A stretch of DNA of 64,000 nt, from the IMG/VR virus record IMGVR_UViG_3300032240_001991, positions 62,001 through 126,000 of that record. One strand, 5' to 3'. Below the pieces are notes generated by a model. The model made no database searches. It was not told the DNA's origin and was given only the letters and a program-made list of their open reading frames with translations. Position numbers and translations under genes: made by a program. Positions 141-59,625 of this stretch are shown here, one piece after another. Within the stretch, counting starts at the first letter, position 1. Every line of letters starts with the position of its first letter.

Positions 141-193
141 ATGTAGCCTCTCTGTGTTGTGTTAGGACTGTCCTAACAGTTAATATATTACTA

Positions 194-412
194 TCATGCT
201 AGATCAAAGTCAACCACTAGTATCAACTCAGCTTCCCAAAGTCTAAGAGCAAAGGTGCTAGAGCCCACTCTAACGGCGAGGGGTCCGCCCCTCGCAGCGC
301 GAGCCAGTACTACCACACGCTCGCCCGCAACAAACCCCAAGTCAGCCCAACGACCACTAGGAGCAGAAGTAATTCTATAGGCACATCCCTGCACCGCTTC
401 CGCTAAGGTCAT
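194..412 (-). CDS. feoA: FeoA-like (SH3-fold) protein
   Basis: LGFVAGERVVVLARAARGGPLAVRVGSSTFALRLWEAELILV matches the FeoA pattern LG..G..V.V...A..GGP..V.V....ALR..EA..I.V. Confidence 0.7.
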   Translation of the reverse strand: MTLAEAVQGCAYRITSAPSGRWADLGFVAGERVVVLARAARGGPLAVRVGSSTFALRLWEAELILVVDFDLA

Positions 413-1572
413 GCGACTCGTAACAGTACTGTGTGCTCGTTAGTACGCGGTTTCATAGTGTGCTCCACGCCCTTGATCGCGTCAAACCACTTACGCAGTT
501 GATTCTTGCCCAGCTTCATAAACTCTGCCAGCTGAGTTTCGGGCTTACGCAGAGTCTTCTGTATGCAGCCTTTATTAGCAATGCCCACAAGACTGGTGCC
601 TTTAGCCATAATGCTCTTGTCAAATTCCCCACGATATACGCCCAGCTTGCGCCGCCGTACATCATAAACCCACACTTCTGAAGCACCCAAGACTTCTATG
701 GGCTTGATGCTGGTGATCTTGAGTTCCTTATGCTCCCCAAGATACTTGAGCTTGCGTACCAACTTAGCACGATCTACGGGTTTGGCCTTGCGTACACGAG
801 CCACTTTCTTTTCAATAGCCAAACGACCCGCACTGGCTTCACAGTCATCTAGAAACGCTATAGCAGCCTTAAGACTCTTGGCACTGACGAATCTGTAGCC
901 CTCTAAGAGCTGCTGTGTGCTGTTATCATGATCTCGGCTGGTACGAGCCTCCGCTAGTTCGCGAAGTTCCGCTGTAGACCCTGCTAGTGCTGCTGCCAGC
1001 TTCTTAAAGTGTATGGCACTAAAGCGAGCAAATCCTGTGATGTTAGCAGTCTTGCCTTCACGTACAACACCCCGTAGAATGCTGCCCACAATCTCTTCTA
1101 TTTCTATTACTGCTTGATTGACCTGCAGATCCATGCGTTCCTGCACCCCAATGCGCTCTGCAGGCTGCTGCTGTACAGCAGGAGTGTCTTCCGCTACTTC
1201 TACACGGCGTGCTGCAGACTCTGCTATACTAGACCATATGCGAGCCTGCTCAGAGTCTGTAATAGCAAAGCCTTTGACCTGCAGGCGTGCTAGATAGCTC
1301 ATGCTGGTGCTAAGATGTCGATCGCTAGCGCGTGCTAGGATCTTGAGATCTTGACCAGCAGATTCCCCACGATACAGCGTGATCCAGTCTTCAAAGAACC
1401 GTCGCGAGTCCTTGCTGTCACAGGCATAGTTATACCAGTTGAGTGCTCGTATCAAGAGCCCCATGCGTGTGGACTCTGTAACAGCAACACCTTCCCACTG
1501 AGGTTCATAGCCTCGCGTGTGTATAGTATCTGCTGATACCTTAAGATCGTAAGGTTTGAATGCTCGTGCCAT
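409..1572 (-). CDS. Conserved phage hypothetical protein (387 aa)
   Basis: Long ORF, 4-bp overlap with feoA, upstream promoter at 1636-1665; function not recognised. Confidence 0.8.
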   Translation of the reverse strand: MARAFKPYDLKVSADTIHTRGYEPQWEGVAVTESTRMGLLIRALNWYNYACDSKDSRRFFEDWITLYRGESAGQDLKILARASDRHLSTSMSYLARLQVKGFAITDSEQARIWSSIAESAARRVEVAEDTPAVQQQPAERIGVQERMDLQVNQAVIEIEEIVGSILRGVVREGKTANITGFARFSAIHFKKLAAALAGSTAELRELAEARTSRDHDNSTQQLLEGYRFVSAKSLKAAIAFLDDCEASAGRLAIEKKVARVRKAKPVDRAKLVRKLKYLGEHKELKITSIKPIEVLGASEVWVYDVRRRKLGVYRGEFDKSIMAKGTSLVGIANKGCIQKTLRKPETQLAEFMKLGKNQLRKWFDAIKGVEHTMKPRTNEHTVLLRVA

Positions 1573-1635
1573 AGTTAGTATACCTTGTTTAAAAACAGTC
1601 TAAAAAGACACCAAAAACTGTCTCTTTAGGCGGTT

Positions 1636-1665
1636 ATTTTACCACTATTTAGACCAAAAAGTCAA
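1636..1665 (-). promoter_or_regulatory. sigma70-type promoter with an overlapping TAAATA late element
   Basis: Minus strand TTGACT-18 nt-TAAAAT, with TAAATA inside the spacer. Confidence 0.55.
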
Positions 1666-1769
1666 GAAACTGAGCAAATTTTGGTAAAAAATAATTTGGT
1701 TGACAGTGGGGAAGAGAGGCATAGTTAAAATGGTGCCAACCAGTTTCCCCTCAAACCTCACCTCAAACC

Positions 1770-1952
1770 TCACCCCAAATCCGTTTTATAGCGAATGTGT
1801 ACAGCAAAGTCATAGGCTGCTTCAGGATCCAAACCTTTGGCTACAGCCCATCCCAGAGTCAAACTAAACCAATCTTGTTCGCTGTCTGGGTCAATTGCTA
1901 GTGCTCTATCGGAGCATTCGGTTTTGAACAGTTCGATCAATTGTTCGTTCAT
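1770..1952 (-). CDS. Hypothetical early protein
   Basis: ORF overlapping its upstream neighbour by 4 bp (ATGA-type coupling). Confidence 0.7.
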   Translation of the reverse strand: MNEQLIELFKTECSDRALAIDPDSEQDWFSLTLGWAVAKGLDPEAAYDFAVHIRYKTDLG

Positions 1953-2188
1953 TGGTTGCCCTCGGCCATGTCGTTAATAGCGGCCGCTGTTTGGATTCCC
2001 ATTCTGTAGCCTTCTCGAAAGGCCCGTTCTGCCACTGCTCTCACAGTGGCTCTAATGTTAATGACCAAGTCATAGCCCGGGTCGCCGGGCTCATGTGTTA
2101 GAGGATTGGCCAACTCTAACTCGTTAAGATAACTGTCAGTTAAGCCTTGGCCAACAGCCTCTAGATCATATCCAATTTTGATAGGCAT
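1949..2188 (-). CDS. Hypothetical early protein
   Basis: Directly downstream of promoter 2214-2242, with GCAAGGA RBS. Confidence 0.75.
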   Translation of the reverse strand: MPIKIGYDLEAVGQGLTDSYLNELELANPLTHEPGDPGYDLVINIRATVRAVAERAFREGYRMGIQTAAAINDMAEGNQ

Positions 2189-2213
2189 TTTCTAGTCCTT
2201 GCTGTGTCTGTGT

Positions 2214-2242
2214 ATTATAAACAGGTTTTACCGGTCTGTCAA
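2214..2242 (-). promoter_or_regulatory. Early promoter, perfect sigma70 consensus, with GGTAAAACC spacer box
   Basis: Minus strand TTGACA-gaccGGTAAAACCtgtt(17 nt)-TATAAT. Confidence 0.9.
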
Positions 2243-2245
2243 CCC

Positions 2246-2539
2246 TCAGTATGGACATCCGATCATGCCCGTGTTGTAGCGGTCCTGCATGATCTGATAG
2301 AATTCCTCAACTGCCGCTGTAGGGCTAATCTGGCGATGGCGCGGGCTGGCTAGGCGTCCTGCAGCCTTGGCGCGACCATAGGCCTTGTTGAAGTTGTCGT
2401 GGTAACTGCAACGAGCTACCGCATAATCGATACCGTCGGCCTTTTCAATAAAGGCCACAGTGGCCCCGCCACGGCTTTCAAGGCGGCCGTGAATGTCGCG
2501 CTCACGATAGTGAACATACTTGATCTTGGGCGTAGTCAT
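2246..2539 (-). CDS. Hypothetical early protein
   Basis: AAGGAG RBS and own promoter at 2577-2604. Confidence 0.75.
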   Translation of the reverse strand: MTTPKIKYVHYRERDIHGRLESRGGATVAFIEKADGIDYAVARCSYHDNFNKAYGRAKAAGRLASPRHRQISPTAAVEEFYQIMQDRYNTGMIGCPY

Positions 2540-2646
2540 TGGTCGATCTCCTTACTGTGTGTCTCTGTCTGCTGCTATTATAGCAGGTTTTACCTAACTG
2601 TCAAGAGCTAGGTAGTTTTTTTACGAGAACTACCAAACTCAAACCC

Positions 2647-3594
2647 TTACTTGGTGTTCAGGAAGGGAATCGGAGCACCTGCGTAGATATTCTGCGGCAG
2701 TTGACCGTTCCACGTCTTGGCCTTCTGCATCTCGACCTCAATGCGACGCAGTTCCAGCACATCCTTGTTCTGGGCCAGTGCAGCGTTCTGCACACGGAGT
2801 GCTTCAGCCTGGGCCTTGGCCACAGTCAAGTTAGCATAGGCCTCACCATCAGCAGTGGCCTTGGCCGCAGCAGCCTCGGCTTCTGCGATAGCGACCTTCT
2901 GCTTCTGCTCAGCCTCAACGGTCTTGAGCTTGTTCTCAGCAGCCAGGCGCAACTGCTCCTGCTCAACCTTGCTGTTGATGGCTCGCATATAACTATCCTG
3001 GAAGGCAAAGTTACGCATATCGATATTGATCACCTGGGCCCCATAGATAGCCAACTTGGCCTGCAGCGTGCTCTTAATGTCAGCAGACACCTGAGCTCGT
3101 TGTGCAATCAAGTCGGGGGCGGTATACTTGGCAGTCACAGCCTTAAACGCTTCCTGCGTGGCAGTCTGAACGTAACTGCTCAAGTCGCCATTGTGGCTGT
3201 ACTTCTCGTAGACTTCAGCAACCTTGTCAGTGGCAATGCTGTAGCGTACAGTAAGGTCAACGTGTACGGGCTGCTGATCGCTGGTGCTACCATCGGCCTT
3301 GTCAATAGAAGCAGTCTCAGCACGAATGCTGAAAATGTTCAACTTCTGCCAGGGCGGAAGGATTGCCAGGCCCTCAGCCTCAATGCCCACGATCTTACCA
3401 AACTGGGTAATGACGCCGCGGCTACCGGTGGGTACCGAAGCAAATGGGTTGGCCCATGCCAAAACCAGCACGCCAGCCACCGCTGCGGCCACATGGGTAA
3501 CGATCTTAGGTACGTTGACGTTGACGTCAGTGACTTCTTCGCCCATGCGATTGGTACGAGTGTTCTTAGTGAAATAACTGTCTGAAAATGACAT
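2647..3594 (-). CDS. SPFH/band-7/prohibitin family membrane protein
   Basis: N-terminal TM helix, VPTGSRGVITQFG, D..V..DLTVRY, coiled-coil AEAEA region, C-terminal W.G.LP. Confidence 0.9.
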   Translation of the reverse strand: MSFSDSYFTKNTRTNRMGEEVTDVNVNVPKIVTHVAAAVAGVLVLAWANPFASVPTGSRGVITQFGKIVGIEAEGLAILPPWQKLNIFSIRAETASIDKADGSTSDQQPVHVDLTVRYSIATDKVAEVYEKYSHNGDLSSYVQTATQEAFKAVTAKYTAPDLIAQRAQVSADIKSTLQAKLAIYGAQVINIDMRNFAFQDSYMRAINSKVEQEQLRLAAENKLKTVEAEQKQKVAIAEAEAAAAKATADGEAYANLTVAKAQAEALRVQNAALAQNKDVLELRRIEVEMQKAKTWNGQLPQNIYAGAPIPFLNTK

Positions 3595-3606
3595 GATATC
3601 GACCTC

Positions 3607-3852
3607 TTACTGGTAAAGTTCGTTGAAACGACGCAGGTCCACCGACAGTTTGTCAGTGGGCAAGTGCTCAGTGACTTCAAATACTTCACTGGTGCTTGCG
3701 GTAGTAATCACTGCAGGAGTGACCTGTGCAGTCTGAGTGGGCTTAGAGTGAAAGAAATAGTAACCTAGCCCAAACACAGTCATGCCTAACAGGGCAATAC
3801 CTGCTACCTTATTAAACTTCTCAAAAGAATCTTCTTTGATCGTAAACTGCAT
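3607..3852 (-). CDS. Small single-TM membrane protein
   Basis: Hydrophobic VAGIALLGMTVFGLGYYFF; GAGGAG RBS; promoter 3882-3909. Confidence 0.75.
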   Translation of the reverse strand: MQFTIKEDSFEKFNKVAGIALLGMTVFGLGYYFFHSKPTQTAQVTPAVITTASTSEVFEVTEHLPTDKLSVDLRRFNELYQ

Positions 3853-3912
3853 ATTGTCTGCTCCTCTGTCTTTGTCTGTGTAGTATAGCAGGTTTTACCA
3901 AAAAGTCAACCT

Positions 3913-4107
3913 TTAGGCCTTATCGAGTACACGAACAACGAGTTCCGTGCTCTTTACAGATTTAACCCGTTCCCATTTCTCTAGGATGTCATTTTTAGAA
4001 AAAGAACACTTCTTCTTGCGCCACTCTAGAAACTCTCGTGCCTCAATCCAGTAGACCGTTGAATCATCAACAGGGTCATACTCTTCAACCAATCGAAACT
4101 TAGCCAT
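3913..4107 (-). CDS. Hypothetical early protein
   Basis: GCAAGGAG leader; promoter 4137-4165. Confidence 0.75.
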   Translation of the reverse strand: MAKFRLVEEYDPVDDSTVYWIEAREFLEWRKKKCSFSKNDILEKWERVKSVKSTELVVRVLDKA

Positions 4108-4161
4108 TTCTCTTGCTCCTTGCTGTGTGTGCGGGTATTATACTAAGGTTTCACCAAAAAG

Positions 4162-4605
4162 TCAAGCCAATTCTTTCTTTGCCGCCCGCTTGCGAGGCAC
4201 GCCCTTCTTAGTGTAACGAACCATTCGAGCGTAACGATGCTGCCCCATCAAGATCTGGATACGACCTTCGAACCCGTCCTTAATAGGAACGTTCCCAGTT
4301 TCAATTTTGAAGTTGTTCTTGTCAAACCACTGAAGCCACTCGTAAAGTTCGGCTTCGGCTTCCTCACCGCGGCTCAATACTGCCACGCAGGGATGCTTAT
4401 GGTAGGCGTTCTCCGGACACCAAATGGCGCCATTCTTATCTGCTCGTTCGTAGTCCTCGTCGTACCATGCATAGTCTGGATAATTACCATCAACTACAAT
4501 TCCCACACAATGCCGTCCGATGCCTACTTCACCTTCAAGAGCCAGTTGACAGTTATTCTTAGCGGCCCACACTGCCATCCAGGTGATCTTCTCTTCATGC
4601 TTCAT
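4162..4605 (-). CDS. Hypothetical early protein (start refined to MKHEEK)
   Basis: AAGGAG RBS before ATG 4605; its stop TGA lies inside the next -35 element. Confidence 0.7.
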   Translation of the reverse strand: MKHEEKITWMAVWAAKNNCQLALEGEVGIGRHCVGIVVDGNYPDYAWYDEDYERADKNGAIWCPENAYHKHPCVAVLSRGEEAEAELYEWLQWFDKNNFKIETGNVPIKDGFEGRIQILMGQHRYARMVRYTKKGVPRKRAAKKELA

Positions 4606-4663
4606 TTTTCGCTCCTTTACACACTTGGGTTTTTCACACCAAGGGTGACGACTGTGAATATCG

Positions 4664-4867
4664 TTATTTCCCATGGGCTAATGACTCTTGAATTTCATTA
4701 ACCCAGCAACTGATGTCGCTGCTGCCGATCTCTTCAAAATCGTAGAGATAAGCGGCCTTTTCGTCGATAGCGTCTAAAAGACGACTGCCATACTCAACTA
4801 GGAGATCTATATGCTGGGTGCGTATACGATAGATGATGCAATCTTTAACTGCTTGACTGCTGCTCAC
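4664..4867 (-). CDS. Hypothetical early protein
   Basis: GCAAGGAG leader; promoter 4897-4926. Confidence 0.7.
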   Translation of the reverse strand: MSSSQAVKDCIIYRIRTQHIDLLVEYGSRLLDAIDEKAAYLYDFEEIGSSDISCWVNEIQESLAHGK

Positions 4868-4922
4868 GGTCTACTCCTTGCTGTGTGTATGAGGCTATTA
4901 TACTATGGTTTTACCAGTACTG

Positions 4923-5513
4923 TCAACCACTATGAGTCTTGAGAACGTCAATCAGGCTCTTGCTTAGGTCCCAGTGGCCCTTCAAAACCGCTTCGCAGGC
5001 CAGCTGGGAGATTCGATCCAGGAATTCCGTTTCTGAGGTGTGCTCTTGCACCAGCACACCCAGTCCCTTGAGTCGAGCCACCAGCTCAGGGTACCCCTCA
5101 GGGTGTTTGACGTAGCAGCCTTGCACATCGTCGTAGGCACGAGGGTCCACCGGCAACTGCTGTGGGCCCTGACGCTCGCTCACCTCTTTGGCTTCACGGA
5201 GACCCAGGTTGGCCAGCTCTCGCAGGGCCTTGATTCCGCTGACCTTGCGATTGCCCCATTCGGTGGGCATGGTTACAGTCACTTTGCTAGGTATCATAAC
5301 AAATCCTTTCTGAGGGAGGCTTCTGCTCAAATTAATGGGCTGCTTCAGAGCGTTACGAGCAATGTCCCGTGCAGCAACCACATCCGCGCGGGCCCACTCG
5401 TTGATGTCCTCGGCATAGTAGATCTTGCGTTCAATCTCAGACAGACTGGTCCGCAGTCGCTGGATTTCGGCTTGCAACAGGTCTTGATCGCTCACGTCTA
5501 CTCCTGTAAACAA
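4923..5513 (-). CDS. Protein with a ribosomal L7/L12 C-terminal-domain-like motif (alternative start at 5297)
   Basis: KVSGIKALRELANLGLREAKEVSE resembles the bL12 CTD KI.VIK.VR..TGLGLKEAK..VE; second RBS GAAAGGA before ATG 5297. Confidence 0.6.
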   Translation of the reverse strand: MFTGVDVSDQDLLQAEIQRLRTSLSEIERKIYYAEDINEWARADVVAARDIARNALKQPINLSRSLPQKGFVMIPSKVTVTMPTEWGNRKVSGIKALRELANLGLREAKEVSERQGPQQLPVDPRAYDDVQGCYVKHPEGYPELVARLKGLGVLVQEHTSETEFLDRISQLACEAVLKGHWDLSKSLIDVLKTHSG

Positions 5514-5543
5514 TAGCCCAGGGTCACATAACCCTGGCGCTCT

Positions 5544-5726
5544 TTATTGTTCGTGTACTATAGCAGGTTTTACCACAGGCGTCAACTGATTTTTTGCCTT
5601 AGGGCCCTTGTACCCCGTGCCCTTCTGATAGATCAACCACACATGGTCAGAGCAGTAACTGCGGTTCTGATAGCCGGGGCGGCCACACTTGGCCTGCCCC
5701 TCATCACGCCATTCACACTTGGGCAC
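5544..5726 (-). CDS. Small Cys/His-containing hypothetical protein
   Basis: C-x10-C-x9-C-x2-H pattern; follows the ATPase gene directly. Confidence 0.6.
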   Translation of the reverse strand: MPKCEWRDEGQAKCGRPGYQNRSYCSDHVWLIYQKGTGYKGPKAKNQLTPVVKPAIVHEQ

Positions 5727-5727
5727 G

Positions 5728-6591
5728 TTACACCCCCTTCTTCATGCAGGTCGTCTTAGCCATACCCTTCCACGCAGCAGGGAAGCTCTTCTTGAGGTCT
5801 GCAATCTTGAGCACCATACGCAGGCTGAGCTCGCGCAGTTGAGTAGAGTTAGTAGCGATGTAATCCAAAATCTCTGCCTTCTCTGCTTCTTCAAACTCGT
5901 ATTTCTGCAACATCCCATCGCCTACAATCTGACGAATACGCAGGAGTTTTTCTCGGTCCGTATCCATCTGCAGGTCAATGTAGTGGCAGCGACTTTCAAG
6001 TGCCATCAAGTGACTACGCAGTTTCTTAGAACGTACATACTCAAATTTGATGTTGGTGATAAAGATCGCAGCACCACAGAACTCAAAGCGGTCTGGAATG
6101 CCTTCGCTACGCAAGAGTCGGCTGTCCAAGTTCCAGCTGATGTAGCGGCGCTCAGAACTGTCTAGCGCACCCTTAAGGATATTGAGGCTCAACTGGTCCA
6201 TGAGCACATCGTCGCAGTCGTCAAAGACCACTACGTTACCCTTATCAGCGAACCCAAACAGTTTAGCATAGAGACCCAGAGCACTCATAGCACCCTTGAC
6301 AATCTCATACTTAGGCTTACGCTGAGCCAAGGTATTGAACAGGTCGTCCTTCTGCAGAACAGCCTCAACACCAAAACTCTTGCCTACGCCGGGCGGCCCG
6401 CTGACAATCATAGCCCGCACATCCCCATGCTTGACAGCACGGGTCATGTCATCTAGAATCTGGAAACGAGAACGCAGGCGCTCAAGAATCTCATCGTCAG
6501 TTTCGGCCTGCACCTCTTGTGCGCGGCGTGCGATTGCTTCTTGGTCAAAGTCAATTACATTCTCAATCTTGGTAGTAGCGGTTCGAGCCAT
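5728..6591 (-). CDS. AAA+ family P-loop ATPase
   Basis: Walker A GPPGVGKS, Walker B VVVFDDCD, arginine-finger region ALESRC. Confidence 0.9.
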   Translation of the reverse strand: MARTATTKIENVIDFDQEAIARRAQEVQAETDDEILERLRSRFQILDDMTRAVKHGDVRAMIVSGPPGVGKSFGVEAVLQKDDLFNTLAQRKPKYEIVKGAMSALGLYAKLFGFADKGNVVVFDDCDDVLMDQLSLNILKGALDSSERRYISWNLDSRLLRSEGIPDRFEFCGAAIFITNIKFEYVRSKKLRSHLMALESRCHYIDLQMDTDREKLLRIRQIVGDGMLQKYEFEEAEKAEILDYIATNSTQLRELSLRMVLKIADLKKSFPAAWKGMAKTTCMKKGV

Positions 6592-6644
6592 TAGGTCACC
6601 TCTGTATATTTAAGACTGTATTATACTGAATTTTTGGTAAAAAG

Positions 6645-7004
6645 TCAATCCATGCGTGAGCCAACACTGGCATCAAGCCCCTGGCTTTTCAGTACCTTAG
6701 CGAACGCATCAGCATAGGCTTCTTTGAGCTCCATGCTCTGATTGCCCTCGTGAACCCAGTATTGCAGCCCCGGCTGGCTGTAACTCTTTTGGAATCCCTG
6801 CTCAGTCAAGCGGCGTCCTACCCGGCTGTTGCTACGGACCCCACGGATATTGACCCAAGCAAACCCACAAGGGCCTCCGGGTACCGTCCACCGATGCTGG
6901 CCGTCAGTGACCACCATGGGTTGAGGATTAGCAGCCTGAAGAGCAGCCATGCCCTGACGGTGCGCTTCTGCAAGAACTTCGTCGATATTCTGTTCAGTTA
7001 CCAT
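6645..7004 (-). CDS. Conserved phage hypothetical protein (start refined to MVTEQ)
   Basis: GCAAGGAG RBS before ATG 7004; promoter 7033-7061. Confidence 0.75.
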   Translation of the reverse strand: MVTEQNIDEVLAEAHRQGMAALQAANPQPMVVTDGQHRWTVPGGPCGFAWVNIRGVRSNSRVGRRLTEQGFQKSYSQPGLQYWVHEGNQSMELKEAYADAFAKVLKSQGLDASVGSRMD

Positions 7005-7047
7005 GTATATGCTCCTTGCTGTCAGTGTGCGTATACTAGCACAGGTT

Positions 7048-7359
7048 TTACCAGCCGTCAACCGGTCGCAGTCCGCTGATTACTCCTGCTTGGCTTAGTG
7101 TATCTTTTACACGGTTAAGGGCAGAACCACTATGGCCCCCAACGTGCCAGGCATAGAGACCCTTGGGAGTTTCGTCTTCCTTCCAATCGTAGATAGTGGC
7201 CACAGTACCATCTGCATACCGTAGTACCCACCCTACCGTAATCTTGTCCCCGCCCATAACATCCGGAGGACCAAATATCGCTACCAGTTGATCATAGGTA
7301 GCAGTAACGTATCCCACAAGGCTAGTGCCGGTGCCTTCGGCGTCTTTAGTAAACTTCAT
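7048..7359 (-). CDS. Conserved phage hypothetical protein
   Basis: GCAAGGAG RBS; promoter 7386-7414; ATIYDWK...W.VGG motif. Confidence 0.75.
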   Translation of the reverse strand: MKFTKDAEGTGTSLVGYVTATYDQLVAIFGPPDVMGGDKITVGWVLRYADGTVATIYDWKEDETPKGLYAWHVGGHSGSALNRVKDTLSQAGVISGLRPVDGW

Positions 7360-7410
7360 CTGGATCTCCTTGCTAGTGTTCGCGTACTATAGCACAGGTT
7401 TTACCAAAAG

Positions 7411-7623
7411 TCAAACTTCGTTGGCGTCTACATCCAGTTCTGTTTCGTCTTGGACATAGTCATAGGCCGAGGTCAATTCTTGATCAAAATCCCATTCACT
7501 TGTTTCTGCACAGTAGTGAATGATGTCTGCGATAAGATCTGCCGGACGAGTATAATTCTCGTTATTAAGGAACATCTGGGCCACTCGACCCACTGCCTGC
7601 TGGCGAAAAGTAAGATAGGTCAT
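7411..7623 (-). CDS. Hypothetical early protein
   Basis: GAGGAG RBS; acidic C-terminus. Confidence 0.7.
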   Translation of the reverse strand: MTYLTFRQQAVGRVAQMFLNNENYTRPADLIADIIHYCAETSEWDFDQELTSAYDYVQDETELDVDANEV

Positions 7624-7647
7624 TATCGCTCCTCAAGTCAAACGTAG

Positions 7648-7672
7648 GGGGGTGCAGTTGCCTACACCCCCC
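7648..7672 (-). terminator. GC-rich stem-loop, probable terminator
   Basis: GGGGGTG-cagttgccta-CACCCCC immediately after the stop at 7679. Confidence 0.5.
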
Positions 7673-7678
7673 AGTGGA

Positions 7679-7882
7679 TTAGCCCACCAGCGCGTTGTTA
7701 CGCACGGTGTTGCTAACGCGGCCGTACAGCCCATCGGCCGCCTTCTCCGAGATCTCCTTGCGGAGACCGCCCGACGCCGTTCCGTTGCCGCTCAACATAC
7801 GCGCCACAGCACGGATGCTGCGGAACTTGTAGGTCAGGCCCGAGTTCGGAAAGGTCACATCGATCGTTACATTGCGCTTCAT
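7679..7882 (-). CDS. Small basic hypothetical protein
   Basis: AAGGAGAG RBS; promoter 7926-7954. Confidence 0.7.
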   Translation of the reverse strand: MKRNVTIDVTFPNSGLTYKFRSIRAVARMLSGNGTASGGLRKEISEKAADGLYGRVSNTVRNNALVG

Positions 7883-7969
7883 TTCAACTCTCCTTAAGTT
7901 ACTAGCACCTTGCTAGTATGTCGTTACTATAACACCGTCTAATGACTGTGTCAACCTTTTTTTACCAAA

Positions 7970-8614
7970 TCAGTGAGCGTAGTAGCCCACGTTCTCAACA
8001 CTCTCATCCCAACAGGCACGGCACGAGCCGCACTCATTGTCCTGGAAACGGCTTGGGCAATCATACCCATGCGCTTCGCTGTTCTTGTGCACGGTGCTGG
8101 TGTGCGTCCACCCCTTGGGCGGCTCAGCATCAATCATCTGTGCACTCATACGAATTACAAGGTTCTTAGGCCGAGTATACTGCCTTAGGAACTCTCGCAC
8201 AATACCAAACTCACGGGTAGGCAACCAATGGTCGATCCAGGGCGTCAATTCAGCCACGCGAGCAATCATCATAAGATGCTTCACGCTCTGCAGGTCCCCA
8301 CTGTCGTGCCAGCGAAAGTATTCTTCATTCTGCATCAATTTGACCATTGCACTGACCCACGAGTCCTCTGTAAGAGTGTCGTGTAGGGCTTCTACGAGCG
8401 TCGTGTAGCGGCGATCGTGAGCGGCCACTGTGCTCTTCCAAGTGTAAGCACCTTTGAGTGCGTAGCACTTAAAGCAGACGCTGCCCTCAACCAATCGTAG
8501 TTTGCTGCCAGTATGACATTTCTTAGCACTGAAGCCAAAACTCTTGCCTGGCATCTTAGAAGGCTCACTCAATCCTCCTACGAACTCTCCTGCTGCTGCC
8601 TTGGTCTTGAACAT
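7970..8614 (-). CDS. Gp88-like protein (Cys-rich)
   Basis: C..GSKL....SVC..CYA, FRWHDSGD, WLPTRE, C-terminal C.SC.ACW; typical of the mycobacteriophage gp88 family. Confidence 0.75.
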   Translation of the reverse strand: MFKTKAAAGEFVGGLSEPSKMPGKSFGFSAKKCHTGSKLRLVEGSVCFKCYALKGAYTWKSTVAAHDRRYTTLVEALHDTLTEDSWVSAMVKLMQNEEYFRWHDSGDLQSVKHLMMIARVAELTPWIDHWLPTREFGIVREFLRQYTRPKNLVIRMSAQMIDAEPPKGWTHTSTVHKNSEAHGYDCPSRFQDNECGSCRACWDESVENVGYYAH

Positions 8615-8671
8615 TTCTGCTCCTTGCTAGTGTTCGTGTACTATAACACAGGTTTTACCAAAGGTCAACCA

Positions 8672-8857
8672 CTAACTATTCCAAGGAACGGTTCTCACGG
8701 TAACGCCGTCCCTGTCTGTTTCATAGAGGCCGGCTTCGTGTATGATGTATTGATCTTGAAAATGATCAAACTCTAGATCTGCACGATCCTTGGCCTCCTC
8801 TTCGGTACAGTCCGGAAGATCTACTTCTACTTGGATACGCATCATGTACTTAGGCAT
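8672..8857 (-). CDS. Hypothetical early protein
   Basis: Small acidic ORF in the early cassette. Confidence 0.6.
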   Translation of the reverse strand: MPKYMMRIQVEVDLPDCTEEEAKDRADLEFDHFQDQYIIHEAGLYETDRDGVTVRTVPWNS

Positions 8858-8941
8858 TAGAACCCCTCAGGAAGATAGCCCGTAAGCCGCTCTATCGCTT
8901 CAACTAACGAAAACCCCATCTCTTTACGCATATTATTCTCC

Positions 8942-9295
8942 TTAATCAGAACTGTCAACATCGTTGATCTGACCGCAATGAACACACTCATAGCGATTGT
9001 AGCAACGTCCAAGATTCATCGTCCGCACCCACTCATGCCCAGAGCACTTCGCAGCAATGGCCTCAGTCACATAGCCATGTCCGTAGCAGTGACTACACGC
9101 ACAGGTGAAGTGTCTGTAGCGATGCCGATTCTCTGGAGTGTCAGGTCTACCGTGTAGACTGTAGGAGTTGAGACTGAGATTCCAACCACCATACCCACGA
9201 CACTTTGGGCACTCTACGATGTAATCATACAGAGGTTCCTTGCGCGAGAAGTCCACGAAGGCATCTGGATGATCTGGCGTAAGAAAGTCTGACAT
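8942..9295 (-). CDS. Zn-finger protein with DnaJ-type CxxCxGxG repeats
   Basis: CPKCRGYGG and CSHCYGHG plus CVHCG; GCAAGGAG RBS; promoter 9325-9352. Confidence 0.75.
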   Translation of the reverse strand: MSDFLTPDHPDAFVDFSRKEPLYDYIVECPKCRGYGGWNLSLNSYSLHGRPDTPENRHRYRHFTCACSHCYGHGYVTEAIAAKCSGHEWVRTMNLGRCYNRYECVHCGQINDVDSSD

Positions 9296-9348
9296 ATGTT
9301 ACTCCTTGCTCTAACTATGCGACTATTATAGCAGGTTTTACCAAAAAG

Positions 9349-9972
9349 TCAACCTTCGTATTCACCTTCTGGATCAATCCCATGTTTATTGAGATCGATC
9401 TCTAAATTCTCTTCATCATCCCCGTCCTCATCTTCATACTCTGCCTGCTCGCGTTCGTACTCTTCAATCTGCTCGGAGATACAGAAACGTTCGTCCAGTT
9501 CAGTAATCTGTTCACGGACCTGGTCAGCAGTCCATCCGCTATAGTCTACGGAATTATCTCCTTCACTGTTAGTAAAGGTTCCTGCAAATTGCATACCTTG
9601 TTCATGATAGTAGGCTTCAACTTCAAAGCCCTGCTTTACCATATACTCAAAGAAAGCAATAGGTGGCCCCCATGCACTGTCAAAGAAGAGTTCGATGAGA
9701 TCAACTTCTTCATTGATGATGCGGGCGTCAACATCCCACTTGATTCCCCAGTTCTTGCATTGCCAACTATACCAGTCTGGAGCACCGTACTTCTCAATGA
9801 ACTCAGTGGCTCGCTGCCCTTCCCATTCGGGCGAACAATATTCATGCAACTCTGCAGGGCAAGGCAAGAACTCGTTGAATAATCGGTCGGCCTTGACGCC
9901 AGTCTTGACTCGCAAGATCATAGCCGGGTCCTTGTGGGTAAAGGTCACGTGATTCGCGCACCAATTTGGCAT
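9349..9972 (-). CDS. DUF1281/YubB-like ferredoxin-fold protein
   Basis: MPNWCAN, DWYSWQCKNWGIKWD, FDSAWGPP, YYHEQG motifs. Confidence 0.85.
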   Translation of the reverse strand: MPNWCANHVTFTHKDPAMILRVKTGVKADRLFNEFLPCPAELHEYCSPEWEGQRATEFIEKYGAPDWYSWQCKNWGIKWDVDARIINEEVDLIELFFDSAWGPPIAFFEYMVKQGFEVEAYYHEQGMQFAGTFTNSEGDNSVDYSGWTADQVREQITELDERFCISEQIEEYEREQAEYEDEDGDDEENLEIDLNKHGIDPEGEYEG

Positions 9973-10025
9973 TTAAAATTCCTCTTGTTAGTGTCTGTGT
10001 ACTATAGCAGAGGTTTTACCAATTG

Positions 10026-10211
10026 TCAACCTCTCATTAGGTCAAAGATGCTTCGTTGTAGATCTGCCAGTTCATCATGCGGAACATAAAAGTCTGTTCT
10101 AGGATCCCAGTACTCGCCCTCTTTGGGATCATAGTACAAGACCCTGCCGTTGGGATACTGGAAGGGGCCTTCCAACCCCTTCCTGGGCCCATAGTCTTTA
10201 GAGAGGGCCAT
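10026..10211 (-). CDS. Conserved phage hypothetical protein (start refined to MALSK)
   Basis: GLEGPF.YPNGRVLYYDPKEGEYWDP.TD motif. Confidence 0.7.
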   Translation of the reverse strand: MALSKDYGPRKGLEGPFQYPNGRVLYYDPKEGEYWDPRTDFYVPHDELADLQRSIFDLMRG

Positions 10212-10362
10212 TGACGCGCCGGTCAAGTGCGGCACCCCAACCAGCAAAGGCTACCACCCATGCAATAGAAGCACTAGAGTCACCCAAATACCAGTTGATA
10301 AGAAAAAGAATCAGCGTTGATGCCACTAGGCCAAATTCAAGAAAAGTAAGATACCGTTTCAT
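10198..10362 (-). CDS. 54-aa two-TM membrane protein (not in the ORF track)
   Basis: Manual translation MKRYLTFLEFGLVASTLILFLINWYLGDSSASIAWVVAFAGWGAALDRRVNGPL; AAGGAG RBS. Confidence 0.6.
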   Translation of the reverse strand: MKRYLTFLEFGLVASTLILFLINWYLGDSSASIAWVVAFAGWGAALDRRVNGPL

Positions 10363-10448
10363 AAGAACTCCTTAAGAATGGCAGTTTTTTCTGTAGTGCT
10401 GCCAACTGCGGTCTATACTTATATAGCGCCTGTCCTCGCGCTTCCGGA

Positions 10449-10781
10449 TTAGGCTGCGTCGCGCAGGCGATAAATCACGCCCGTCGCAGTCTCCACAATG
10501 TCAACATCGCTGTTGGCAGCGTACCAGTCAAAGTTACGGACCTTGGTGCTGTCACGCTCCCAGTCGGTAGGACCTTCAACCTTGACCGCAAGCCACTTCT
10601 TGCGGATGTTGAAGAACACGCGACGTCCTGGGTAGACTTCGCGAACACGTTCAGCAAAGTGTTCACCGCCCTTGATGTAAGAGTCGGGCCAAAGCCGGCG
10701 GTTCTCGCGGCTCTTGTTGACGGCGTCCACGTAGGCGCCCACGCGATCAGATGCAAACCAGTTTTCAGTACGCTTGAACAT
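10449..10781 (-). CDS. Hypothetical early protein
   Basis: AAGGAG RBS; promoter 10821-10849. Confidence 0.75.
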   Translation of the reverse strand: MFKRTENWFASDRVGAYVDAVNKSRENRRLWPDSYIKGGEHFAERVREVYPGRRVFFNIRKKWLAVKVEGPTDWERDSTKVRNFDWYAANSDVDIVETATGVIYRLRDAA

Positions 10782-10857
10782 TTTTCGCTCCTTTTGCTAG
10801 CACCTTGCTAGCGTGCCAATACTATAACAAAGGTTTTACCAACTGTCAACCATTAAA

Positions 10858-11190
10858 AAAATGCATTCTCCCTGCTGGCGGTATTTTCCATTCACCACAA
10901 ACAATTATGTGGTATCCGCTGCCCAACACAGGGAGACTGTCGTGCTGCTAACGCCCGTTTGGTTTGACGGCAGTATTGCTACTGGAGACCATTGACCACT
11001 CACCTTGCGGTGGATAGGCTGTTCTCAAACCACCCGTAGATGTCACTCTACTTCTATCGTGCGGGTCACACTAGCCGCTAACTAGGCGGCGTGTTCAGTA
11101 AAGATTGGTTGGAAAGATTCGTCAAAATCTATCTTCGCCAGTTGACGCTGACCGCCCAAACCTGGGCGCCAATCTTAAATCGTTTAACTT
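10858..11190 (-). ncRNA. Candidate large structured ncRNA A (about 330 nt), family not recognised
   Basis: No ORF of 60 aa or more in 10782-11234; own promoter 11197-11225; at least eight helices including two GCAA tetraloop hairpins; ends in a U-tract. Confidence 0.65.
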
Positions 11191-11234
11191 GGGTCTAGCA
11201 TAACAATTTTACCAAACCCTGTCAACCAAATTGT

Positions 11235-11480
11235 TTACTCTTCTACCGCAATGACAGAATCCTTGCGGAAACTGCGCCATCCGGCCTTTTCCACATCCCA
11301 AACGCTGACCACATCGGGATTAGGAACTCGAGCCTGCCCCGTGCCAGTGCTGGGCGGCAAACGGCTTTCCTGCAGAGTGCAACGAAGATTCCGTACTGTG
11401 CCATCGCTCTTAGTAAAGCGAACAGTACGCTCACCCAAACGTAGGTCATTCAGCAACTGATCAAAATTGATCTTAGTCAT
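11235..11480 (-). CDS. DUF2693/WYL_2-like SH3 beta-barrel protein
   Basis: V.FTKSDGTVRNLRCTL...VWDVEKAGWRSFR motif; AAGGAG RBS; promoter 11505-11533. Confidence 0.75.
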   Translation of the reverse strand: MTKINFDQLLNDLRLGERTVRFTKSDGTVRNLRCTLQESRLPPSTGTGQARVPNPDVVSVWDVEKAGWRSFRKDSVIAVEE

Positions 11481-11539
11481 ATAGATACTCCTTATTGAGC
11501 CGCCACTATAGCATCAAGAGGGCCTGCTGTCAATTTCTT

Positions 11540-11875
11540 CTTAATTGGGAGTGGGGGTGGACCCCATGTGGTTCCTGAGCAGGTGTCTGTTGACGCGCCC
11601 AGACAAGATTCTGCTCATATATAAGAGTGTGGAGCCGCTGGCTATGGGTGTACCGCGGCTCCCTCCACGACTTTCTGGGATCGAAATCCGCCCTAGACCT
11701 CTGATGTGGGTAGTCGTCTCAGCATTATCGCACCCGGTACACAAGATCTTCCTAATCTTCCGCCGGACTGTTATCCAGCCCGCAACTATGTTGACCAGTT
11801 AGGTCCGGACCTACCCTAGCGATTATCAGCATCCTAGGTCAGCTTTGGACTTCACTTTCTGCTTGGAGTTTTAAC
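11540..11875 (-). ncRNA. Candidate large structured ncRNA B (about 335 nt), family not recognised
   Basis: Starts just after TAAATA (11881-11886); nine or more helices, a UUCG loop, a 7-8 bp pseudoknot; only RBS-less shadow ORFs overlap it. Confidence 0.6.
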
Positions 11876-11892
11876 AAAAGTATTTAACCAGT

Positions 11893-11976
11893 TGGTGCGA
11901 GTGGAGGGATTCGAACCCTCAAGCCGTTGGGCGGCAGATTTTAAGTCTGCTGTGTATACCGTTCCACCACACTCGC
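11893..11976 (-). tRNA. trnL: tRNA-Leu(UAA)
   Basis: GCGAGTG acceptor, anticodon arm GCAGA-CTTAAAA-TCTGC, long variable arm, GGTTCGAATCC T-arm, encoded CCA. Confidence 0.97.
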
Positions 11977-12012
11977 ATATCATACAGTAATTATATATTC
12001 TAAATCTAAATA

Positions 12013-12142
12013 GTCCTAGCCTCGGTTTACTATTCTCTTGCTACCTGATGCAGATGCTTACAGCATCATTTACTAGTATCACAGGCTACCCGCTTCGAAC
12101 AAGGTTAGGTTTGTACTCAACCCGACGAGCCGAGGCTAGGAC
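12013..12142 (-). ncRNA. Candidate 130-nt RNA with 13-bp paired ends inside the tRNA operon
   Basis: GTCCTAGCCTCGG (12013-12025) is the exact reverse complement of CCGAGGCTAGGAC (12130-12142); internal GATGCT-tac-AGCATC hairpin. Confidence 0.6.
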
Positions 12143-12147
12143 ATAAT

Positions 12148-12223
12148 TGGTGGGCCCTCAGGGATTCGAACCCTGAACCAAAGGATTATGAGTCCTCTGC
12201 TCTAACCGTTGAGCTAAAGGCCC
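12148..12223 (-). tRNA. trnI: tRNA with CAU anticodon, probably tRNA-Ile2 (lysidine type) rather than Met
   Basis: 76 nt, GGGCCTT/GAGGCCC-like acceptor ending GGGCCCACCA, anticodon arm GAGGA-CTCATAA-TCCTT, encoded CCA; lacks the initiator GGG/CCC anticodon stem and 1:72 mismatch. Confidence 0.9.
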
Positions 12224-12243
12224 GTGTATATTATTACAGCGGG

Positions 12244-12251
12244 GTATTTAT
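12244..12251 (-). promoter_or_regulatory. T4-type late promoter TATAAATA driving the tRNA/ncRNA cluster
   Basis: Exact TATAAATA on the minus strand about 20 nt upstream of the tRNA(CAU) 5' end. Confidence 0.7.
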
Positions 12252-12253
12252 AA

Positions 12254-12394
12254 TTAACACTCCGTAAGATAGTGATATTCACGCCCTGGAAATTGTGCTT
12301 CGATTAGCCTCTTAGCATCCCAATAGTCTCGAGCCTGCAGCTCATAATCAACTGATCTTCCGTCTATCATCAGTGTACAACGATACCTACGCAT
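12254..12394 (-). CDS. 46-aa hypothetical protein (not in the ORF track)
   Basis: MRRYRCTLMIDGRSVDYELQARDYWDAKRLIEAQFPGREYHYLTEC; promoter TTGACA-17-TATACT at 12426-12454; GAGAG RBS. Confidence 0.65.
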   Translation of the reverse strand: MRRYRCTLMIDGRSVDYELQARDYWDAKRLIEAQFPGREYHYLTEC

Positions 12395-12485
12395 ATATGT
12401 ACTCTCTATCTGTTAGTGTCTGCATAGTATAGGGTCAGATCAGTAAGTTGTCAACAGTGGCCTAAATATATACAGCGGGGTATTA

Positions 12486-13202: not shown

Positions 13203-13239
13203 GTCTTGTACCTTTAGTTTTATTTAATGCTCTAATAGA

Positions 13240-59234: not shown

Positions 59235-59263
59235 TTGACAACATTCCTAAATTGTTGTATAGT
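59235..59263 (+). promoter_or_regulatory. sigma70 promoter of tmRNA
   Basis: TTGACA-17 nt-TATAGT. Confidence 0.8.
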
Positions 59264-59269
59264 TTTTTT

Positions 59270-59620: not shown

Positions 59621-59625
59621 AGACA

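What the first reader, a model, noticed from the sequence alone, without database searches (positions are those of the whole stretch)
11540..11875. Second unnamed pseudoknotted RNA of about 335 nt downstream of tRNA-Leu (RNA B)
Seen: it starts about 6 nt after a TAAATA (11881-86). Helices: TGACC/GGTCA 11792-96/11837-41; a 14-bp palindrome TAGGTCCGGACCTA 11800-13; GGGCUG/CAGUCC 11765-81 (a G-U pair only on the minus strand); ACGACT/AGTCGT 11667-72/11712-17, enclosing GGAU-UUCG-AUCC; GGAGCCGC/GCGGCTCC 11631-38/11655-62; nested GAGCAG/CTGCTC and TGTCTG/CAGACA 11577-11616. The loop of the GGAGCCGC hairpin can pair 7-8 bp with 11735-42 (GUGUACCG/CGGUACAC), which would form a pseudoknot. Inference: a late-expressed, ribozyme-sized RNA of unknown function.
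Basis: partly seen in the sequence, partly recalled or inferred. Interest (0 to 1): 0.8.

Follow-up and report, generated by a model that had tools for sequence, protein, structure and literature searches.

The report
Non-coding trailer after phage tRNA-Leu
This 360-base stretch is a real non-coding trailer behind a tRNA-Leu gene in the early region of a 327-kb freshwater phage. Its many small helices are about what chance gives, and only one or two hairpins survive in its single detectable relative, so it looks like a fast-evolving spacer RNA rather than a ribozyme-like pseudoknotted RNA.

Summary
As evidence of a fold they are weak. Counts of perfect stems match dinucleotide shuffles, the whole-region MFE z is -1.8, sliding z-scores resemble the neighbouring genes, and Rfam gives nothing.

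RNA B is the 3' trailer of a sigma-70-driven unit: 46-aa ORF, tRNA-Met, RNA A, tRNA-Leu(UAA), RNA B. No terminator precedes the next promoter.

The closest syntenic relatives (L055-L064) carry an unrelated 240-250-nt spacer in the same slot. A sister 328-kb phage (L127) has a 331-nt trailer after its tRNA-Leu, which there is split by a group I intron. That trailer is faintly but significantly alignable to RNA B. It keeps the GGAGCCGC hairpin architecture with a different stem sequence. It does not keep the proposed pseudoknot or the ACGACT helix, and it lacks the last ~90 nt.

By contrast the two neighbouring non-coding elements, RNA A and region C, show clear conservation and covariation. The TAAATA motif is a real promoter-like signal in this phage, but it is not conserved at this site.

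Verdict: an ordinary, weakly constrained tRNA trailer or spacer. A small lineage-specific RNA is not excluded.

The parts
12426..12454 (-). sigma-70-type promoter (TTGACA-17-TATACT) that starts the unit containing RNA B
   Evidence: 11 of 12 consensus positions. It is one of about 20 such promoters, all on the minus strand of the high-GC arm.
12254..12394 (-). 46-aa ORF, first gene of the unit
   Evidence: codon score -0.10, borderline; no Pfam hit
12245..12252 (-). perfect TATAAATA about 21 nt upstream of tRNA-Met (candidate T4-like late promoter)
   Evidence: genome-wide enrichment of the motif upstream of ORFs
12148..12223 (-). tRNA-Met(CAU), CCA encoded
11977..12147 (-). 'RNA A': structured spacer between the two tRNAs, closed by a 13-bp stem
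   Evidence: MFE z -3.8. 84% identical copy in sister phage L127 6108-6244, with two compensatory changes in the closing stem.
11893..11976 (-). tRNA-Leu(UAA), intronless, CCA encoded
   Evidence: 86-88% identical in relatives L055-L064
11881..11886 (-). TAAATA at the very start of RNA B (possible late promoter; not conserved)
   Evidence: The island holds about as many copies as chance predicts: 4 on the minus strand against about 3 expected. The motif is absent at the start of the L127 trailer.
11534..11892 (-). RNA B proper: 359-nt untranslated trailer, from the tRNA-Leu 3' end to the next -35 box
11610..11892 (-). part of RNA B that aligns with the tRNA-Leu trailer of sister phage G001 (L127 5437-5767)
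   Evidence: Global alignment z 4.0-4.7, with 0 of 500 shuffles as high. 1 of 386 natural island segments scores as high. Best hit of model R3 in L127.
11631..11662 (-). GGAGCCGC hairpin: outer 8-bp stem, bulged A, 3-bp inner stem, loop holding ACCCA. This is the only element whose architecture is clearly kept in the homologue, with a different stem sequence.
   Evidence: 8 of 8 pairs in L127, p 0.08
11735..11742 (-). GTGTACCG, the proposed pseudoknot partner of the hairpin loop (11648-11655)
   Evidence: An 8-nt complement is present but is unremarkable by chance (p 0.13). It is not kept in L127 (7 of 8 pairs is the chance level, p 0.5).
11765..11781 (-). GGGCTG/CAGTCC hairpin with GAUAA loop
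   Evidence: L127 has a shorter hairpin with a UAUAA loop at the aligned place.
11800..11813 (-). 14-nt perfect palindrome TAGGTCCGGACCTA
   Evidence: It is unique in the genome; the only other site within two mismatches is at genome 183004.
11534..11617 (-). 3' part with the nested GAGCAG/TGTCTG hairpin, a GGGG-TCCA-CCCC hairpin and a C-rich tail. It has no counterpart in L127.
   Evidence: C exceeds G by 8 per 80 nt
11505..11533 (-). next sigma-70-type promoter (TTGACA-17-TATAGT, extended -10), which ends the spacer
   Evidence: conserved in relatives
11235..11480 (-). 81-aa WYL_2 (Sm-like SH3 barrel) gene downstream
   Evidence: Pfam PF10902, E 4e-13. This gene was the anchor used to find the relatives.

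Best explanation
RNA B is the untranslated 3' trailer (external spacer) of a small early transcription unit in the high-GC, sigma-70-promoter-rich arm of a ~327-kb freshwater jumbo phage. The unit reads: promoter, 46-aa ORF, tRNA-Met, RNA A, tRNA-Leu(UAA), RNA B.

Shown: it is non-coding and sits flush against the CCA end of tRNA-Leu. No intrinsic terminator lies between the unit's promoter and the next promoter.

Inferred: host RNA polymerase reads through it. Its 5' end is made by ordinary tRNA 3'-end processing (RNase E or RNase Z type cleavage plus trimming). Its 3' end is undefined. The C-rich last third could load Rho, or the transcript may simply run on into the WYL_2 gene.

The sequence evolves fast. 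Only a loose architecture survives in one sister phage, chiefly one bulged hairpin with an ACCCA loop. Nothing recognisable survives in the next closest relatives. It is therefore best read as a weakly constrained spacer or processing by-product that may contain one small functional hairpin. It is not a compact, pseudoknotted, ribozyme-like RNA.
For: Non-coding:
- stops in all minus-strand frames
- 67-aa ORF codon score -0.37, against +0.18 to +0.35 for most real small genes of the island (two, including the 46-aa ORF of this unit, score about -0.10)
- no Pfam hit or homologue for either ORF

Context:
- promoters at 12454 and 11533; 0 terminator-like sites against 4 expected
- about 20 consensus promoters, all on the minus strand of the high-GC arm

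Structure no better than background. No Rfam family, even at E up to 10 on 371 nt.

Comparison:
- Syntenic relatives L055-L064 have tRNA-Leu (86-88% identical), the same promoter, WYL_2, and region C (73-75% identical). In the slot itself they carry an unalignable 240-250-nt spacer.
- Covariance models in both directions find nothing.
- Synonymous sites between the window and these relatives are saturated. That fits neutral or weak constraint on RNA B, and contrasts with strong constraint on region C.
- Sister phage G001 has a 331-nt trailer after its own tRNA-Leu, also behind a sigma-70 promoter. The trailer aligns weakly but significantly with RNA B.
- In that trailer the GGAGCCGC hairpin architecture is kept; the pseudoknot and the ACGACT helix are not.
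Against: - A 360-nt untranslated stretch is unusual in an arm where intergenic gaps are about 55 nt.
- A non-coding stretch of 240-360 nt is kept after tRNA-Leu in every relative examined.
- The relatives' own spacer is more conserved between two lineages (71%) than four-fold sites (57%), so the slot seems to matter.
- Summed over the eight tested pairings (seven helices and the pseudoknot), pairing in L127 exceeds all 1000 shuffles.
- Both trailers have MFE z near -2.
- Local hairpins are mildly enriched (p 0.06).
- A TAAATA promoter-like motif sits exactly at the start of RNA B.
- There are no expression data at all: no RNA run was listed.
Confidence: 0.5

Rival explanations
1. RNA B is a lineage-specific, functional structured RNA. 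It would be released from the tRNA precursor and/or transcribed late from the TAAATA at its 5' end, then accumulate as a stable RNA, by analogy with the T4 tRNA-region RNAs C and D.
For: - A homologous trailer occupies the same place in sister phage G001.
- The bulged hairpin with the ACCCA loop is kept with a different stem sequence.
- Summed helix conservation beats all 1000 shuffles.
- z is about -1.8 to -2.0 in both phages.
- TAAATA is a real promoter-like motif. 45 of 79 upstream sites lie 10-29 nt before a start codon, and the motif is depleted overall.
- The two neighbouring non-coding elements are proven structured RNAs, so the locus is an RNA-gene cluster.
Against: - Helix counts and sliding z-scores are at background level.
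- The pseudoknot and the ACGACT helix are not conserved, and the 3' 90 nt are absent in the homologue.
- TAAATA is absent at the start of the L127 trailer.
- There is no trace in the L055/L061 lineage, although tRNA-Leu, WYL_2 and region C are all conserved there.
- No Rfam family matches.
Confidence: 0.22
2. RNA B is a decaying relic. Its 5' half would descend from the 3' two-thirds of a group I intron (plus the 3' exon) of an ancestral intron-bearing tRNA-Leu(UAA) gene of the kind still present in sister phage G001. That relic would have been left behind when an intronless tRNA-Leu replaced the 5' part. Its 3' half would descend from the old trailer.
For: - G001 carries a group I intron in the anticodon loop of its tRNA-Leu(UAA): RF00028, 64.3 bits, E 8e-16.
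- RNA B positions 1-175 align better to that intron (score 40, reached by 0 of 97 natural segments) than to the 5' part of the L127 trailer (20.5, p 0.22).
- Positions 176-359 align to the 3' part of the trailer (p 0.03).
- The GACCTA/TAGGTC stem of RNA B matches a GACCT/AGGTC hairpin of the intron.
- The reading would explain a ribozyme-like look without a working fold.
Against: - RF00028 gives no hit on RNA B or anywhere in the genome, even at E up to 10.
- BLAST and nhmmer see no similarity.
- The covariance model built from RNA B prefers the trailer, not the intron, in L127.
- The alignment statistic is modest after several comparisons were tried.
- The first 13 nt of RNA B resemble the start of the L127 trailer about as well as they resemble the intron.
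Confidence: 0.18
3. The stretch acts at the DNA level. The 14-bp perfect palindrome would be a protein-binding site (operator), or the stretch would be a recombination or origin element.
For: A perfect 14-nt palindrome has an expected frequency of about 0.02 in 360 nt (reasoned from 4^-7 per position). The stretch lies near the boundary of the divergent early arm.
Against: The palindrome is unique in the genome, so there is no set of operator sites. It is not conserved in L127 or the other relatives. No repeats or iterons were found.
Confidence: 0.05
4. The stretch encodes a small protein: the 67-aa TTG ORF on the minus strand or the 85-aa ORF on the plus strand.
For: Both ORFs exist. A weak AGGA lies 5-6 nt before the TTG.
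Against: - Codon score -0.37 for the 67-aa ORF.
- No Pfam hit.
- No homologue among 5.8 billion proteins.
- In the exhaustive HMMER search the only hit was a tandem-repeat artefact.
- No tblastx match to the relatives.
- The plus-strand ORF runs against every gene of the arm.
Confidence: 0.02

Closest known systems
Phage T4 RNA C and RNA D (stable RNAs encoded in the T4 tRNA gene region)
   Same: Non-coding RNAs encoded next to phage tRNA genes, with function still unknown. The T4 RNAs are classed as late RNAs (PMC9697503), which echoes the TAAATA motif at the start of RNA B.
   Different: The T4 RNAs are about 120-140 nt (size from my own knowledge) and were detected experimentally by Northern blot (PMC9697503). 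RNA B has no expression data. No sequence relation to them turned up; the only check was the Rfam scan, and I do not know whether Rfam holds a model for them. RNA B is poorly conserved even among close relatives.
3' external transcribed spacer of the E. coli glyW-cysT-leuZ tRNA operon (3'ETS-leuZ, an sRNA sponge)
   Same: A trailer directly 3' of a tRNA-Leu gene, co-transcribed with the tRNAs and released by tRNA processing. This is the same kind of molecule by position and biogenesis. (Based on my own knowledge; papers on it are listed.)
   Different: 3'ETS-leuZ is about 50 nt, ends at a terminator and works by pairing with Hfq-bound sRNAs. RNA B is 359 nt, has no terminator and has no known partner.
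Group I intron of tRNA-Leu(UAA) (Rfam RF00028)
   Same: The sister phage has such an intron in the orthologous tRNA gene. The 5' half of RNA B shows faint collinear similarity to it, including one shared hairpin stem.
   Different: RNA B lies outside an intact tRNA-Leu, gets no score from RF00028, and lacks the 5' third of such an intron. I could not identify a P7 or guanosine-binding core.
Large ornate phage-associated RNAs found near tRNA genes (GOLLD, ROOL)
   Same: Large non-coding RNAs of phages that often neighbour tRNA genes (from my own knowledge).
   Different: Neither family, nor any other Rfam family, matches. Those RNAs are 500-800 nt with strong covariation; RNA B has none demonstrable.

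Membership tests
Any Rfam 15 family | Covariance-model score at or above the family's gathering threshold | tested here: not met
   No match on 11525-11895 at gathering thresholds or at E up to 10. The only listing was Ms_IGR-8 at 13.5 bits against a gathering score of 44, on the opposite strand.
Group I intron (RF00028) | Match to the intron core model | tested here: not met
   No hit on RNA B or anywhere in the 326,658-bp genome at E up to 10. The same model scores 64.3 bits on the L127 tRNA-Leu intron.
Group I intron (RF00028) | Interrupts a host gene whose exons join to an intact product | tested here: not met
   tRNA-Leu upstream is complete and intronless. No tRNA half or exon was detected at the 3' side, even with relaxed ARAGORN settings.
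tRNA-operon 3' trailer (external transcribed spacer) | Lies directly 3' of the last tRNA of a unit, on the same strand, with no promoter or terminator in between | tested here: met
   RNA B starts right after the CCA end of tRNA-Leu. The unit's promoter is at 12454, the next promoter at 11533, and there are no terminator-like sites.
tRNA-operon 3' trailer (external transcribed spacer) | Co-transcribed with the tRNA and released by tRNA 3'-end processing | not testable with these tools
   No RNA run holding the sequence was listed. The only runs holding it are DNA.
T4-type tRNA-region stable RNA (RNA C/D) | Accumulates as a discrete stable RNA during infection | not testable with these tools
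   No transcript data.
Conserved structured ncRNA (generic criterion) | Helices maintained by compensatory changes across homologues | tested here: inconclusive
   Only one homologue is available (the L127 trailer). The GGAGCCGC hairpin is kept with a different stem sequence. The pseudoknot (p 0.5) and the ACGACT helix (p 0.96) are not kept, and the two 3' hairpins are absent. The relatives L055-L064 show nothing.
Conserved structured ncRNA (generic criterion) | Folding energy clearly below shuffled controls | tested here: inconclusive
   z -1.79, with 3 of 100 shuffles as good. 150-nt windows range from +0.2 to -2.0, like the flanking coding sequence.
Protein-coding gene | Open frame with native codon usage and homologues | tested here: not met
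T4-like late transcription unit | TAAATA-type promoter conserved at the 5' end | tested here: not met
   The motif is real genome-wide. It is missing at the start of the homologous L127 trailer and from the V1/V2 spacers. Within the high-GC arm its count equals chance.

The most novel reading that the evidence does not exclude
RNA B and the L127 trailer would be two members of a fast-evolving, jumbo-phage-specific RNA that is always made as the 3' extension of tRNA-Leu(UAA). Its conserved bulged hairpin with the ACCCA loop would be a binding or processing module, for example a decoy or sponge released by tRNA processing. Alternatively, RNA B could be a captured fragment of the tRNA-Leu group I intron.
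Probability: 0.2. Interest if true: 0.55.

Novelty: new member of a known kind. Interest (0 to 1): 0.3.

Why it matters
As it stands, little: phage tRNA clusters commonly carry untranslated trailers. This one shows no convincing fold, family or conservation.

Three things are of value:
- The ribozyme-like impression is explained by chance helices in 51% G+C sequence.
- The same 1.4 kb holds two non-coding RNAs with real covariation (RNA A and region C), which deserve the attention instead.
- The sister phage carries a group I intron in the orthologous tRNA-Leu(UAA). That gives a natural pair of intron-plus and intron-minus alleles, and a possible origin for part of RNA B.

If a discrete RNA B species were found, it would add a phage example to the small class of functional tRNA-trailer RNAs.

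Tried and rejected
Searches for homologues of RNA B that found nothing:
- blastn against 50,697 phage records. The only matches were the tRNAs, including the Xanthomonas phage Xoo-sp13 hit.
- blastn and nhmmer against 52 IMG/VR loci and 53 JGI loci holding WYL_2 genes.
- A self-search of the genome.
- Two exact 18-mers in IMG/VR.
- tblastx.
- Sequencing-run look-ups. Only the probable source sample holds RNA B, with no variants.

Flanking proteins as anchors: the 238-aa, 110-aa and 527-aa proteins have no IMG/VR relatives.

Ideas considered and rejected:
- RNA B as a decayed glutaredoxin gene. That gene fills the tRNA-to-WYL_2 gap in distant loci, but RNA B shows no trace of it.
- RNA B as a pseudo-tRNA (relaxed ARAGORN).
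- Homology with the V1/V2 spacers of L055/L061. The blocks I saw by eye were not better than shuffles, and model R1 found nothing.
- An association between WYL_2 and an upstream RNA. Region C is found only in this phage group and in L065/L066.
- RNAalifold on the two-sequence alignment. I discarded it as overfitted.

Technical failures:
- One model-alignment call failed internally.
- nhmmer in the Python box returned no hits even for the tRNA exon, so its negatives carry little weight.

Full report
**Setting.** The window is bases 62001-126000 of a 326,658-bp IMG/VR virus contig. It is a jumbo phage with tail-fibre, virion, ligase and ribonucleotide-reductase genes. It was recovered from aquatic or freshwater metagenomes. 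The genome is about 37% G+C except for a 25-kb arm at 48-50% (genome 50-74.5 kb). That arm is packed with small minus-strand genes about 55 nt apart. About 20 near-consensus sigma-70 promoters lie in it, most directly upstream of a gene. It contains no intrinsic-terminator-like site, where about 4 would be expected. The relatives show the same G+C pattern, so this is a lineage feature, an early-type arm, and not an assembly chimera. An independent Logan contig also spans the G+C boundary.

**Anatomy around the finding (minus strand).**
- promoter 12454-12426
- 46-aa ORF
- tRNA-Met 12223-12148
- a 170-nt structured spacer, 'RNA A'
- tRNA-Leu(UAA) 11976-11893
- RNA B 11892-11534
- promoter 11533-11505
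- 81-aa WYL_2 gene (PF10902)
- promoter 11225-11197
- a roughly 340-nt non-coding 'region C'
- promoter 10849

 RNA B is therefore the trailer of a tRNA unit. It is not separated from that unit by any recognisable signal.

**Checking the observation.** They are not unusual. In 1000 dinucleotide shuffles of the 359 nt:
- perfect stems of 6 bp or more: 10.9 expected, 11 observed
- stems of 8 bp or more: 0.62 expected, 2 observed (p 0.13)
- local hairpins: 3.4 expected, 7 observed (p 0.06)

The pseudoknot is one of the two 8-mers, and it competes with the closing pair of its own hairpin. Whole-region MFE z is -1.79 with an ill-defined ensemble. The plus strand gives -0.98. In 150-nt windows RNA B scores between +0.2 and -2.0, like the neighbouring coding sequence. 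RNA A reaches -3.8 and region C about -3.0. Rfam gives nothing at gathering thresholds or at E up to 10, even when only 371 nt are submitted.

**Coding potential.**
- All three minus-strand frames carry stops.
- The 67-aa TTG ORF has an out-of-frame-like codon score of -0.37. Most real small genes of the arm score +0.18 to +0.35, though two of them score about -0.10.
- Neither ORF has a Pfam hit.
- Neither has a homologue in the 5.8-billion-protein word search or in the exhaustive HMMER search. The one E = 1e-4 hit is a tandem-repeat artefact.

RNA B is non-coding.

**Comparison with the closest syntenic relatives.** Nothing similar to RNA B exists in the phage records, in 105 WYL_2 loci or elsewhere in the genome. 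Relatives were reached through the WYL_2 protein (65-70% identity) and its encoding contigs L055-L064. These contigs are syntenic:
- tRNA-Leu(UAA), 86-88% identical
- a 240-250-nt non-coding spacer
- the same promoter
- WYL_2
- region C, 73-75% identical

Their spacers fall into two lineages, V1 and V2. The two are homologous to each other: 71% identity over aligned columns, against 57% at four-fold sites. They are not detectably related to RNA B:
- Alignment scores lie within shuffles.
- A covariance model of V1/V2 finds nothing in the window.
- A model of the RNA B core finds nothing in 540 kb of related loci except the same phage in another assembly.

Four-fold sites between the window and these relatives are saturated. 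A weakly constrained spacer would therefore be expected to be unalignable. Region C and the tRNA, which are constrained, remain easily alignable.

**A sister phage.** An exact 18-mer of region C led to L127, which lies in G001, a 328,068-bp phage contig that CheckV rates 92% complete. On its minus strand L127 carries:
- a sigma-70 promoter and an RNA A homologue (84% identical, with two compensatory changes in the closing stem)
- a second sigma-70 promoter
- a tRNA-Leu(UAA) interrupted in the anticodon loop by a group I intron (RF00028, 64.3 bits, E 8e-16; ARAGORN misses this tRNA)
- a 331-nt ORF-free trailer
- a 125-aa ORF

BLAST does not link this trailer to RNA B. An optimal global alignment does:
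- z is 4.0-4.7 against shuffles, with none of 500 as high.
- 1 of 386 natural segments of the same arm scores as high.
- The best hit of the RNA B model in L127 is exactly this trailer: 7.4 bits, E 0.01 within the 1.4-kb syntenic stretch and 0.28 within 39 kb.

The two sequences share their first dozen bases, a small hairpin with a (G/U)AUAA loop, a GGAUUU segment and, most clearly, the GGAGCCGC hairpin. In both phages that hairpin has an 8-9-bp outer stem of different sequence, a bulged A on the 3' side, a 3-bp inner stem and a loop containing ACCCA.

A helix-by-helix test, using mapped positions with a ±8-nt tolerance and 1000 shuffles, gave:
- GGAGCCGC hairpin: 8 of 8 pairs (p 0.08)
- GGGCTG hairpin: p 0.05
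- all eight pairings summed: above all 1000 shuffles
- pseudoknot: chance level (p 0.5)
- ACGACT helix: not kept (p 0.96)
- last ~90 nt, holding the two nested hairpins and the C-rich tail: no counterpart

The L127 trailer has z -1.98.

**The late-promoter idea.** TAAATA is a real signal in this phage:
- 79 of 252 sites lie within 100 nt upstream of ORF starts, and 45 of those lie at 10-29 nt, where about 3 would be expected.
- The hexamer is depleted overall: 47 sites in the window against 83 expected.
- A perfect TATAAATA precedes tRNA-Met.

Within the high-GC arm, however, the count equals chance. The site at 11881-86 is not conserved in L127 or in V1/V2. No expression data could be obtained. 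Late expression remains possible but unsupported.

**An unexpected lead.** The 5' half of RNA B (positions 1-175) aligns better to the L127 group I intron than to the 5' part of the L127 trailer. The intron alignment scores 40, reached by 0 of 97 natural segments; the trailer alignment scores 20.5 (p 0.22). The 3' half aligns to the 3' part of the trailer (p 0.03). One stem is shared: GACCTA/TAGGTC in RNA B and GACCT/AGGTC in the intron.

This suggests that part of RNA B may be the relic of an intron-bearing tRNA-Leu allele. Against it:
- RF00028 scores nothing on RNA B or anywhere in the genome.
- The RNA B model prefers the trailer.
- Several comparisons were tried before this one stood out.

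I hold it as a rival at about 0.18.

**Conclusion.** RNA B is real as a non-coding tRNA-Leu trailer and is probably transcribed from the early sigma-70 promoter. As a defined, pseudoknotted, ribozyme-sized RNA it is not supported. The most that comparison shows is one conserved bulged hairpin and a loosely kept layout in one sister phage.

The nearest known kinds are tRNA-operon 3' external spacers (E. coli 3'ETS-leuZ; my own knowledge, papers) and the T4 tRNA-region RNAs C and D, whose function is still unknown (PMC9697503).

The convincing structured RNAs of this locus are its neighbours:
- RNA A.
- Region C. On 6 sequences, 95.5% of cells pair and 18 pairs show compensatory change. The covariation score is 0.241, against about 0.04 for the slid controls.

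Noticed in passing
window 10856-11196 (minus strand); core 10856-11084: 'Region C' is a strongly supported, unnamed structured RNA with its own sigma-70 promoter (11225-11197) and a T-run at its end. It is 73-85% identical across relatives and also occurs in another genomic context (L065/L066). On 6 sequences, 65 pairs are 95.5% paired and 18 show compensatory change; the covariation score is 0.241 against about 0.04 for the slid controls. No Rfam family matches. Diverged copies appear in three other aquatic runs.
   Followed up: partly
window 11977-12147 (minus strand); L127 6108-6244: 'RNA A', the 170-nt spacer between tRNA-Met and tRNA-Leu, is a real conserved structured RNA. MFE z is -3.8 and it is closed by a 13-bp stem. 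The sister phage has an 84%-identical copy with its own sigma-70 promoter and no flanking tRNA-Met. Two C-G to T-A compensatory changes occur in the closing stem.
   Followed up: partly
L127 5770-6075 (minus strand), intron 5845-6030: The sister 328-kb phage carries a group I intron in the anticodon loop of its tRNA-Leu(UAA) (RF00028, 64.3 bits). This is the classic cyanobacterial/plastid insertion site. ARAGORN does not call the split tRNA. The window's orthologous tRNA-Leu is intronless.
   Followed up: partly
whole genome; e.g. window 12245-12252, 13221-13226, 6607-6612 (minus strand): TAAATA, often as (A/T)TAAATA, behaves like a T4-type late promoter. It is enriched about 15-fold at 10-29 nt upstream of start codons and depleted elsewhere: 47 sites in the window against 83 expected.
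   Followed up: partly
genome 50000-74500 (window 1-12450): This 25-kb arm has 48-50% G+C in a 37% G+C genome. About 20 near-consensus sigma-70 promoters lie in it, all on one strand, and there is no intrinsic terminator. The relatives show the same G+C pattern.
   Followed up: partly
window 12471-12484 and 12235-12248 (minus strand); L127 about 5740-5755: The direct repeat AATACCCCGCTGTA follows the stop codons of the 238-aa and 46-aa ORFs. A related CCCCGCTGTAGCGG hairpin lies near the start of the L127 trailer. Function unknown.
   Followed up: no
L055 6247-7198 (also L057-L059): In the V1-type relatives a NUMOD3 homing-endonuclease-like gene (6450-6986) sits between the 5' domain of region C (6247-6413) and a diverged copy of its core (6984-7198). 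An endonuclease ORF thus lies inside a structured RNA gene.
   Followed up: no
L055 5705-5946, L061 5697-5946: The 240-250-nt spacer after tRNA-Leu in the L055/L061 lineage is more conserved between the two lineages (71%) than four-fold sites (57% of 580). MFE z is about -2.2. Its 5' AGCTGGG can pair with CCCAGCT in the loop of a 3' hairpin. It may be a functional element of its own.
   Followed up: partly
window 59234-59629 (plus strand): The phage encodes a tmRNA of the permuted, betaproteobacterial type with tag peptide ANDDVYAMELAA. It is preceded by a TTGACA-17-TATAGT promoter. This hints at a betaproteobacterial host.
   Followed up: no
L002, L004, L006, L025, L028: In more distant phages the WYL_2 gene also lies just downstream of tRNA genes, but there the gap is filled by a glutaredoxin-like gene with a CxxC motif.
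   Followed up: no
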